Assembly (NCBI RefSeq): GCF_001194135.2
Contig: NC_068992.1
Location: 62,495,171 to 62,551,891 of the forward strand
DNA from: Octopus bimaculoides
Lineage: Eukaryota
Direction: 5' to 3'
DNA length: 56,721 bases
Shown here: positions 9,620-9,879 of the stretch, piece by piece
Layout: every line of letters begins with the position of its first letter
How positions within the stretch are numbered: position 1 is the first letter of the stretch
Made by a program: the position numbers and the translations under genes
The notes under the pieces: generated by a model
The model's database searches: none
What the model was told of the DNA's origin: nothing
The model's input: only the letters and a program-made list of their open reading frames with translations

Positions 9620-9879
9620 CTAGAAATAGGAGCTAAAGTGCTCCAATGCTGTTACAAAACACATATGCCGTGATAGGAGCTGCCGTCACCCCGAACACCG
9701 AATCGAGAGTTCCTTAGACTGACCGGCTGGCCTTACTGAAGATGGCTACGGAAATAGCCGAAATTGACCGGTCAATCTAAGGTAGTTTCGGCTCGGTGTT
9801 CCGCGCGCTTGCAGGTCCTATCAGAGTATATGTCACGCGCTTTGTAACTGCATTGGAGCATTTTAGCTTCTATTTCTAG
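9620..9879. repeat. ~260-bp imperfect inverted repeat (foldback element) carrying the hammerhead at its centre
   Basis: Arm 9620-9726 vs arm 9768-9879, about 80% identical by hand alignment. Example: CTAGAAATAGGAGCTAAAGTGCTCCAATGCTGTTACAAA vs TTTGTAACTGCATTGGAGCATTTTAGCTTCTATTTCTAG. No clear TSD. Confidence 0.9.
9731..9782 (+). ncRNA. Type I hammerhead ribozyme motif (Penelope/retrozyme-like, palindromic stem III)
   Basis: CCTTA-CTGAAGA-T-GGCTA-CGGAAA-TAGCC-GAAA-TTGA-CCGG-TCAA-TC/TAAGG. Stem I CCTTA:TAAGG, core CUGANGA and GAAA, stem II 5 bp, stem III within the perfect palindrome ATTGACCGGTCAAT, AUC triplet with predicted cleavage after 9777. One extra U lies between A9 and G10.1. Confidence 0.85.

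What the first reader, a model, noticed from the sequence alone, without database searches (positions are those of the whole stretch)
9731..9782. Intact hammerhead ribozyme, sense-oriented in the presumed upstream intron of the nAChR gene
SEEN: every core nucleotide and all three stems of a type I hammerhead are present on the + strand, with predicted cleavage at AUC after 9777. KNOWN: type I hammerheads with a palindromic stem III are characteristic of Penelope-like elements and animal retrozymes, and they often cleave as dimers. An extra A, C or U between A9 and G10.1 is tolerated, as in the CChMVd hammerhead. INFERENCE: no earlier nAChR exon lies between this motif and 12757, so it probably sits in the pre-mRNA and could cut the intron co-transcriptionally. 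Only one copy is seen in the window, so this is not a tandem retrozyme array.
Basis: partly seen in the sequence, partly recalled or inferred. Interest (0 to 1): 0.7.

Follow-up and report, generated by a model that had tools for sequence, protein, structure and literature searches.

The report
Retroelement hammerhead ribozyme in nAChR intron
The hammerhead ribozyme motif is real, but it looks like an ordinary leftover of a Penelope-type jumping gene, and its neighbouring inverted copy should fold it into a hairpin that hides the ribozyme, so it probably does not regulate the receptor gene.

Summary
The motif at 9731-9782 (+) is present as described. It has a full type I hammerhead core, three uninterrupted helices of 5, 5 and 5-7 bp, and C17 at 9777. 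One extra U (9743) lies between A9 and G10.1. It is the only such motif in the window; shuffled sequence gives about 0.02 loose matches per window and none of this quality in 300 shuffles. No Rfam hammerhead model detects it, even at E<=10.

The extra nucleotide, the G10.1-C11.1 pair, the short open helix I and the palindromic helix III are the published hallmarks of hammerheads carried by Penelope-like elements (PLEs).

This is two head-to-head copies of a roughly 150-nt unit, one of them cut off inside the ribozyme. That layout is typical of PLE insertions.

An nAChR exon lies 3 kb downstream on the same strand, so a sense intronic position is likely. In any transcript that includes the flanks, a -142.6 kcal/mol hairpin beats the ribozyme fold by about 21 kcal/mol.

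Verdict: a new member of a known kind, probably a dead insertion. Co-transcriptional intron cleavage is unsupported. Copy number in the genome could not be checked.

The parts
9731..9782 (+). Type I hammerhead motif of the PLE kind. Helix I 9731-9735/9778-9782; core CUGAAGA 9736-9742; extra U 9743; helix II 9744-9748/9755-9759 with loop 9749-9754; GAA 9760-9762; palindromic helix III 9763-9776; C17 at 9777 (predicted cut 9777/9778).
   Evidence: Sequence read. Only descriptor hit in the window, with 0 of 300 shuffles reaching this quality. Isolated minimum free energy fold is the three-way junction. No Rfam hammerhead hit.
9727..9879 (+). The longer, sense copy of the repeat unit (about 153 nt). 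The hammerhead is at its 5' end and its 3' end is ...CTATTTCTAG. The 5' limit is uncertain; 9727-9767 has no counterpart in the other copy.
   Evidence: Self-BLAST finds an inverted match 9620-9879. Repeat finder I17 gives arms 9661-9726/9768-9833 with a 41-nt spacer. Arm alignment. G+C is 48.5% against 35.3% for the window.
9620..9726 (-). Inverted copy of the same unit, cut off at its 5' end. It starts at the CCGG centre of helix III, so it keeps only the 3' half of helix III, C17 and the 3' strand of helix I (CCGGUCAGUC UAAGG). It has no catalytic core. It ends with the same ...CTATTTCTAG.
   Evidence: 82 of 102 aligned positions are complementary, with a 5-nt indel. Mismatches are 6 G-U type against 5 A-C type on the + strand, so there is no strand bias.
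9880..9913 (+). A 34-nt unique stretch between the end of the sense copy and a (CA)n(TA)n microsatellite. Its length fits the 30-40 bp 'tail' often seen at one end of PLE insertions. This is speculative.
   Evidence: Sequence and repeats. The tail is described in PMC8557442 and PMC11167929. Microsatellites are so dense in this window that lying next to one says little.
12757..12801 (+). nAChR exon DEKNQIMTTNVWLRQ (45 nt, with cag| acceptor and |gtgaga donor). This is the nearest exon downstream of the motif, on the same strand.
   Evidence: Joined to the next exon, it hits PF02931 (ligand-binding domain of neurotransmitter-gated ion channels) proteins at 61-77% identity.
43316..43426 (+). The next nAChR exon ([36 protein letters not shown]). 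It shows that introns of this gene can be about 30 kb long.

Best explanation
This is the remnant of an insertion by a hammerhead-carrying retroelement of the Penelope-like element (PLE) lineage. It could be the terminal (pLTR) part of a PLE or one of its short non-autonomous, retrozyme-type derivatives.

Two copies of a roughly 150-nt unit, both cut off at the 5' end, lie head to head. This is the layout expected when the PLE enzyme cuts both DNA strands and primes reverse transcription on each (inferred). Only the sense copy reaches far enough 5' to include the whole ribozyme.

In its parent element the ribozyme would process element transcripts. It would probably act as a dimer through its 14-nt palindromic helix III, or with help from the element's protein (inferred from published work on PLE hammerheads).

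At this locus it is most likely a passenger in an nAChR intron, in sense orientation. In the pre-mRNA the inverted copy pairs with the 3' half of the ribozyme to form a long hairpin. Self-cleavage should therefore be rare or absent, and no host function is needed to explain the motif.

Shown here: the motif, the inverted repeat, the folding competition, the downstream same-strand exon and the foreign base composition. Inferred: PLE origin, the twin-priming mechanism, intronic transcription and lack of function.
For: Motif and significance.

[quoted passage not shown] This motif shows all of them.

The biochemically tested Poseidon hammerhead of Anolis reads CCU CUGAGGA U GCCUGC...GUGGGC GAAA CG UC AGG, with the same inserted U.

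[quoted passage not shown] The purified PLE protein cuts and extends both DNA strands. Here the head-to-head copies are 9620-9726 (-) and 9727-9879 (+).

The unit has 48.5% G+C against 35.3% for the window.

Mismatches between the arms show no G-U over A-C bias (6 against 5), and 9 are of transversion type. The repeat therefore behaves as a DNA duplicate, not as a selected RNA rod.

Mismatches cluster in the middle of the unit (15 of 48 positions) and spare the ribozyme part and the 3' end (5 of 64; Fisher p=0.002, post hoc). That is expected if the two copies came from two diverged but functional source RNAs.

Dispersed single copies of related elements are common, and about 43% of those in Xenopus lie in introns (bioRxiv 10.64898/2026.07.22.740005).

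Folding competition.
Against: No other copy of the unit could be found, so its repeat-family status is unproven. There was none elsewhere in the window, none in two metagenome scans, and none through a representative-protein search with a pseudo-ORF of the unit. The source genome itself was not searchable.

No PLE reverse transcriptase or GIY-YIG reading frame was seen in the window. This was only a regex check.

Helix III is much longer than in the published minimal PLE hammerheads, and helix II (5 bp) is shorter than their usual 6-8 bp.

No Rfam hammerhead model matches.

If the two arms were identical at insertion and then decayed neutrally to the observed 20% difference, a fully intact ribozyme would survive in only about 3% of simulations. 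That leaves room for constraint on the ribozyme at this site.

No target-site duplication is visible.
Confidence: 0.7

Rival explanations
1. A single monomer of a non-LTR retrozyme. On this reading the 260-nt inverted repeat is not two insertions. It is the element's own highly self-paired (rod-like) RNA structure, as in the small circular RNAs of animal retrozymes, with the ribozyme sequestered in the rod until multimeric transcripts are made.
For: Animal retrozyme monomers measure about 170-400 nt, carry type I hammerheads and are predicted to be 'stable and highly self-paired' (PMC7229834). The 276-nt stretch here folds at -142.6 kcal/mol, z = -12.4. Retrozymes are now regarded as non-autonomous PLE derivatives, and dispersed monomers are common.
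Against: There is no tandem repeat and no second ribozyme. Transition mismatches between the arms show no G-U preference on the ribozyme strand (6 against 5), and there are 9 transversion-type mismatches, unlike a rod kept by selection; the numbers are small. The ribozyme carries the PLE-type inserted nucleotide rather than matching the canonical retrozyme-type model (no Hammerhead_1 hit).
Confidence: 0.15
2. A domesticated intronic ribozyme. The hammerhead cuts the nAChR pre-mRNA in cis, as monomer or dimer, and so tunes mRNA output or exon choice. The hairpin might act as an on/off switch.
For: The motif is sense-oriented, upstream of exon 12757-12801, with no intervening coding exon. It is fully intact despite 20% divergence between the arms; about 3% survival is expected under neutral decay from identity. 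Helix III is stable enough for monomeric folding. There is a precedent in conserved intronic type I hammerheads of amniotes, in RECK, CTCL and DTNB (PMC6155905).
Against: The hammerhead fold is 21.5 kcal/mol worse than the hairpin in context, and its pair probabilities are about 0. Downstream sequence 9783-9795 offers a further competitor. PLE-type hammerheads show low or protein-dependent activity. No conservation data are available. There is no match to Rfam HH9 or HH10. The arms may simply have differed from the start.
Confidence: 0.05
3. A foldback or MITE-type DNA transposon, or a local inverted duplication, that happens to contain a hammerhead-like sequence in its central loop.
For: The arms are sharply delimited and both end in CTAGAAATAG/CTATTTCTAG. 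No reverse transcriptase lies nearby.
Against: No target-site duplication flanks the repeat. A complete hammerhead is not expected by chance, and this one carries the specific hallmarks of PLE hammerheads. Part of the ribozyme lies inside the repeated arm, so it belongs to the repeated unit and not to a random spacer.
Confidence: 0.07
4. A chance match to the hammerhead consensus, with no ribozyme ancestry.
For: No covariance model recognises it. Its folding energy is no better than that of shuffled sequence.
Against: Shuffles give 0.023 loose hits per window and 0 of 300 at this quality. Features that my descriptor did not require are also present: G10.1-C11.1, a 14-nt perfect palindrome and C17. 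The motif also sits in a repeat unit of foreign composition.
Confidence: 0.03

Closest known systems
Hammerheads of Penelope-like elements (min-HHRs and variants with a small palindromic helix III; Cervera & De la Pena 2014, PMC4209133)
   Same: Type I topology with a short open helix I (5 bp). One unpaired nucleotide between A9 and G10.1. A G10.1-C11.1 pair. A palindromic helix III that allows dimers (homodimer -45.5 against 2 x -12.6 kcal/mol). Found as a dispersed single motif with a second partial copy on the opposite strand close by.
   Different: Helix III is a 14-nt palindrome that can fold stably within one molecule; published forms have none or 1-2 bp. Helix II is 5 bp rather than 6-8. 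No PLE reading frame is adjacent. Family status in the genome is untested.
Poseidon (PAc) hammerhead of Anolis carolinensis (PMC11167929)
   Same: The same CUGANGA-U-G10.1 arrangement with an inserted U, a GAAA box, a palindromic centre and UC before the cut. That ribozyme was shown to cleave, and C3 or G8 mutations abolish cleavage.
   Different: PAc has a 2-nt palindrome (CG) in place of helix III, a 6-bp helix II and a 3-bp helix I. It overlaps the start codon of the element's reading frame, and it needed the element's protein to cleave. No sequence similarity exists outside the core.
Animal non-LTR retrozymes (PMC7229834; bioRxiv 10.64898/2026.07.22.740005)
   Same: A small (about 150-260 nt) non-coding unit with a type I hammerhead. 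A highly self-paired predicted RNA. A dispersed monomer lying in an intron. PLE ancestry has been proposed.
   Different: There is no tandem array and only one ribozyme. The ribozyme does not match the Rfam Hammerhead_1 model built on canonical type I hammerheads. G+C is 48.5%, slightly above the <45% quoted.
Conserved intronic hammerheads of amniotes (HH9 and HH10 in RECK, CTCL and DTNB)
   Same: A type I hammerhead, sense-oriented in an intron of a protein-coding gene, thought to derive from retroelement ribozymes.
   Different: Those are defined by deep conservation across species and by canonical loop-loop contacts. Conservation could not be tested here, and the Rfam HH9 and HH10 models do not match.
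CChMVd (+) hammerhead with an extra A10 (De la Pena & Flores 2001, as cited in PMC4209133)
   Same: An extra nucleotide between A9 and G10.1 that is compatible with activity.
   Different: That is a type III viroid ribozyme. The resemblance is limited to this one position.

Membership tests
Hammerhead ribozyme (type I) | Conserved core: C3 U4 G5 A6 N7 G8 A9, G12 A13 A14, A15.1-U16.1, H17 | tested here: met
   All are present at 9736-9742, 9760-9763, 9776 and 9777. One extra U (9743) lies after A9; this is a documented natural variation.
Hammerhead ribozyme (type I) | Three helices around the core, with helix I open | tested here: met
   Helices of 5-6, 5 and 5-7 bp without mismatches. The minimum free energy fold of the isolated 62-mer is the three-way junction.
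Hammerhead ribozyme (type I) | Match to a curated covariance model (Rfam Hammerhead_1, _3, _II, HH9, HH10) | tested here: not met
   No hammerhead hit at gathering threshold, at E<=10 on 501 nt or at E<=10 on 86 nt. PLE-type variants are reported to escape canonical descriptors.
Hammerhead ribozyme (type I) | Mg2+-dependent self-cleavage 3' of position 17 | not testable with these tools
   Needs in vitro transcription of 9726-9787, of a dimeric construct and of 9615-9890, with core mutants.
Hammerhead ribozyme (type I) | Tertiary contact between helix I bulge or loop and loop 2 (needed for fast cleavage at physiological Mg2+) | tested here: inconclusive
   Helix I can be extended past a bulged G9730, and loop 2 is CGGAAA. 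No known contact pattern could be recognised from sequence alone.
PLE-associated hammerhead | [quoted passage not shown] | tested here: met
   U9743. Hallmark listed in PMC4209133. The Poseidon PAc ribozyme has the same U.
PLE-associated hammerhead | G10.1-C11.1 pair and palindromic 15.2-16.2 / loop 3 | tested here: met
   G9744-C9759. AUUGACCGGUCAAU is a perfect 14-nt palindrome.
PLE-associated hammerhead | Short helix I (4-5 bp) and long helix II (6-8 bp) | tested here: inconclusive
   Helix I of 5 bp fits. Helix II is 5 bp, one short of the published range.
PLE-associated hammerhead | Lies in the terminal repeat (pLTR) of an element that encodes RT plus GIY-YIG endonuclease | tested here: not met
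   No GIY-YIG or PLE RT motif in the window by regex, and no long reading frame next to the unit. Most genomic PLE hammerheads are likewise orphan fragments, so this does not exclude PLE origin.
PLE-associated hammerhead | Insertion architecture: 5'-truncated copies, often with an adjacent inverted 5'-truncated copy | tested here: met
   Head-to-head copies 9620-9726 (-) and 9727-9879 (+), with the same 3' end and different 5' ends. Architecture described in PMC8557442.
PLE-associated hammerhead | Member of a multi-copy family with covarying helices in the same genome | not testable with these tools
   The source genome was not available. There were no relatives in the window, in metagenome contigs or among protein representatives.
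Non-LTR retrozyme | Tandem repeats (two units or more), each with a hammerhead | tested here: not met
   One complete motif only, no direct repeat of the unit, and no tandem array apart from microsatellites.
Domesticated intronic hammerhead (HH9/HH10 type) | Conserved at the orthologous intron position across species | not testable with these tools
   No related genomes were available. The Rfam HH9 and HH10 models do not match.

The most novel reading that the evidence does not exclude
The ribozyme and its inverted partner form a two-state RNA switch that the host has taken over. In the nAChR pre-mRNA the long hairpin keeps the hammerhead off. Unwinding or A-to-I editing of the hairpin, or pairing of two transcripts through the 14-nt palindrome, turns it on and cuts the intron, so controlling receptor mRNA output. 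The full intactness of the ribozyme despite 20% divergence between the arms (about 3% expected under neutral decay from identity) is the only hint in this direction.
Probability: 0.03. Interest if true: 0.65.

Novelty: new member of a known kind. Interest (0 to 1): 0.25.

Why it matters
If the main reading holds, the finding matters little. Hammerheads of this type occur by the hundreds to tens of thousands in animal genomes that carry Penelope-like elements, and many copies lie in introns.

It has two modest uses. First, it shows that Rfam's hammerhead models miss PLE-type variants entirely, so Infernal-based annotation undercounts them. Second, it is a clean small example of the head-to-head twin insertion that the two-strand cutting and priming of the PLE enzyme would produce, with the break falling exactly at the centre of the ribozyme's palindrome.

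Only if the motif proved to be conserved and active in the nAChR pre-mRNA would it become an interesting invertebrate counterpart of the amniote intronic hammerheads.

Tried and rejected
1. Rfam was run three ways: whole window at gathering threshold, 501 nt at E<=10 and 86 nt at E<=10. There was no hammerhead hit. The miRNA 'hits' at 9903-9988 are a microsatellite hairpin.

2. I looked for more copies. A sensitive self-BLAST of 9560-9920 against the window found only the inverted arm. Two exact-pattern scans of metagenome contigs, one for the 3' end of the unit and one for the ribozyme with free loops, gave 0 hits. A HMMER search of 1.84 billion representative proteins with the 40-aa pseudo-ORF across the unit gave 0 hits.

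3. Organism identification through the nAChR exons returned only unnamed PF02931 proteins at 61-77% identity, so the organism stays unidentified. An AT-rich, microsatellite-laden invertebrate draft assembly is my impression only.

4. Other CUGANGA...GAAA matches (20628, 25269, 46298, 47949, 53231) have no helices and were rejected.

5. Lying next to microsatellites was dropped as evidence for PLE target preference, because microsatellites occur every few hundred bases throughout the window.

6. No target-site duplication was found.

7. A regex search for PLE RT, DKG and GIY-YIG motifs found nothing credible.

8. A G-U against A-C bias test for an RNA-level selected rod showed no bias.

9. An RT-like frame at 33855-34211 searched against PDB sequences gave no hit.

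10. The supplement of PMC4209133, which might hold mollusc hammerhead sequences, is not held as text.

Full report
THE OBSERVATION

The sequence at 9731-9782 (+) reads CCUUA CUGAAGA U GGCUA CGGAAA UAGCC GAAA UUGACCGGUCAAU C UAAGG. Every invariant hammerhead position is present:
- C3-A9 at 9736-9742
- G12 A13 A14 at 9760-9762
- A15.1 (9763) paired with U16.1 (9776)
- C17 at 9777

Helix I is 5 bp and can be extended. Helix II is 5 bp and closes with G10.1-C11.1. Helix III is a perfect 14-nt palindrome, which folds as 5 bp plus a CCGG loop within one molecule. None of the helices has a mismatch. The only departure from the consensus is one extra U (9743) between A9 and G10.1.

I wrote a descriptor search to test this against chance. 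It finds this as the only hit on either strand of the 56.7-kb window, and only when the inserted nucleotide is allowed. In 300 dinucleotide-preserving shuffles the mean was 0.023 hits per window at loose stem lengths and zero at the observed quality. Five other core-box matches lack helices.

Two cautions apply. No Rfam hammerhead model detects the motif, even at E<=10 on an 86-nt stretch. The isolated RNA adopts the hammerhead fold as its minimum free energy structure, but with an energy typical of shuffled sequence (-12.6 kcal/mol, z = -0.17).

The motif sits at the centre of a 260-nt imperfect inverted repeat, 9620-9879. The right arm (9768-9879) belongs to a sense copy that continues leftwards through the whole ribozyme to about 9727. 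The left arm (9620-9726) is an inverted copy of the same unit. That copy starts at the CCGG centre of helix III, so it keeps only the last 15 nt of the ribozyme and no catalytic core. Both copies end in the same ...CTATTTCTAG, and no similarity continues beyond it. The two copies therefore lie head to head, share a 3' end and differ at their 5' ends. The unit has 48.5% G+C in a window of 35.3%. No other copy exists in the window.

WHAT IT IS

Cervera and De la Pena (PMC4209133) list the features that emerged, unrequested, from hammerheads of Penelope-like elements (PLEs):
- consensus families that are full of covariations
- a conserved G10.1-C11.1 pair
- palindromic positions 15.2-16.2 and loop 3

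They also describe a short helix I of 4-5 bp. The three features that can be read from a single sequence, and the short helix I, are all present here.

The one PLE hammerhead tested with its own protein is Poseidon of Anolis (PMC11167929). From the template RNA printed in that paper it reads CCU CUGAGGA U GCCUGC...GUGGGC GAAA CG UC AGG. It has the same inserted U. My parse reproduces the paper's statement that the cut lies 26 nt after the start codon.

The insertion layout also fits. [quoted passage not shown] The purified enzyme cuts and extends both DNA strands, which offers a mechanism for twin inverted copies; that link is my inference.

I could not show that the unit is repeated in its genome, and no PLE reading frame is in the window. 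Membership of a PLE family is therefore inferred, not proven.

ARE THE ARMS A DNA DUPLICATE OR A SELECTED RNA ROD?

Of 102 aligned positions, 82 are complementary. The mismatches are 6 of G-U type and 5 of A-C type on the ribozyme strand, plus 9 of transversion type and a 5-nt indel. There is no bias toward pairs that keep the + strand RNA folded. This favours a DNA-level duplicate over a retrozyme-style rod, though the numbers are small. I keep the retrozyme-monomer reading as the main rival. Animal retrozymes are 170-400 nt, highly self-paired and now regarded as PLE derivatives.

The mismatches are unevenly spread: 15 of 48 positions in 9783-9830, against 5 of 64 in the ribozyme part plus the 3' end (Fisher p = 0.002, post hoc). 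If the arms had been identical at insertion and then decayed neutrally to 20% difference, a fully intact ribozyme would survive in only about 3% of simulations. The simplest reading is that the two copies were made from two already diverged source RNAs, each still under selection for its ribozyme and its 3' end. Constraint on the ribozyme at this locus is the alternative. I give that alternative a low probability but cannot exclude it.

POSITION RELATIVE TO THE GENE

The exon DEKNQIMTTNVWLRQ lies at 12757-12801 (+) with proper AG and GT borders. The next exon lies at 43316-43426, so introns here can reach 30 kb. Joined together, the two exons hit PF02931 (ligand-binding domain) proteins. The 12757 exon cannot be the first coding exon. 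No candidate for exon 1 or exon 2 lies between 9783 and 12756, or anywhere upstream in the window. The upstream exons and the transcription start are outside the window, so this remains unproven.

WOULD IT CUT THE PRE-mRNA?

Probably not, or only rarely.
- The 276-nt stretch 9615-9890 folds into a hairpin of -142.6 kcal/mol (z = -12.4).
- Forcing the hammerhead fold in that stretch costs 21.5 kcal/mol, and the pair probabilities of helices I and III are about 0.
- When the transcript is grown from 9615, the hammerhead is never the minimum free energy structure once position 9770 has been made. The already transcribed left arm (9712-9726) competes for the 3' half of the ribozyme.
- The downstream stretch 9783-9795 pairs with 9756-9768, which gives a second competitor.

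These are equilibrium calculations. Kinetic trapping of the local helix III hairpin, or the action of proteins, could still allow some cleavage.

Published PLE hammerheads cleave poorly as monomers. The Poseidon ribozyme needed the element's protein, and no RNA-seq ends were found at its cut site. In favour of activity, this helix III is stable within one molecule, unlike the minimal forms. Two molecules could also pair strongly through the palindrome (-45.5 against -25.2 kcal/mol).

COMPARISON AND VERDICT

By sequence architecture and insertion layout, the motif works like, and most likely is, a PLE-lineage hammerhead. It is not a tandem retrozyme array (feature tested, not met). It cannot be filed with the conserved intronic hammerheads of amniotes, because conservation could not be tested and the HH9 and HH10 models do not match.

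Dispersed single copies of such elements are common, and about 43% of the Xenopus copies lie in introns. The giant squid assembly alone has 235 Rfam Hammerhead_1 hits as well as Penelope elements (PMC6962438).

This is a new member of a known kind, of low to moderate interest. The most novel reading still open is a hairpin-gated ribozyme taken over for nAChR pre-mRNA control, at a probability of about 3%.

Noticed in passing
window 43316-43426 (+) and 54575-54703 (+): Two versions of the same nAChR ligand-binding exon ([36 protein letters not shown] and EWWDIWLKWNPSEYAGLKTIEVPAAEIWTPDLVLFN) lie 11 kb apart on the same strand. They could be mutually exclusive alternative exons or the start of a tandem paralogue. 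No Cys-loop exon lies between them.
   Followed up: no
window 10948-11047 and at least 9 further sites (2647, 3731, 7090, 15347, 15799, 19501, 24864, 38002, 47853): A dispersed SINE-like repeat at 69-89% identity. It produces the recurring pseudo-ORF motif 'FHPFGVDK' in ORF lists. It is far more abundant in the window than the hammerhead unit.
   Followed up: partly
window 9903-9988: Rfam miRNA families (mir-297, mir-3149, mir-1277 and others) score E down to 9e-6, far below their gathering scores. The sequence is a (CA)n(TA)n(TG)n microsatellite that folds back on itself, so this is a low-complexity artefact.
   Followed up: yes
window 33855-34211 (+), continuing to about 34720: A stop-free frame with an RT-like 'LLYVDYIALLAG' stretch, probably a decayed non-LTR retrotransposon fragment. 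It has no sequence match in the PDB, and a regex check found no PLE-type (GIY-YIG) motif there.
   Followed up: partly
window 9756-9768 versus 9783-9795: The sequence just 3' of the ribozyme (GUAGUUUCGGCU) is complementary to the 3' strand of helix II plus the GAAA box. This gives an alternative fold that disrupts the hammerhead even without the upstream inverted copy. It could be chance or a built-in off-state of the element.
   Followed up: partly
whole window; for example 9198-9475, 25651-26580, 30603-31550: Nineteen runs of N total 6456 nt, several of them beside microsatellites. The 278-nt gap 250 nt upstream of the repeat is bordered by (AT)n on both sides. It could hide more of a complex insertion, since PLE arrays are known to break short-read assemblies.
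   Followed up: no
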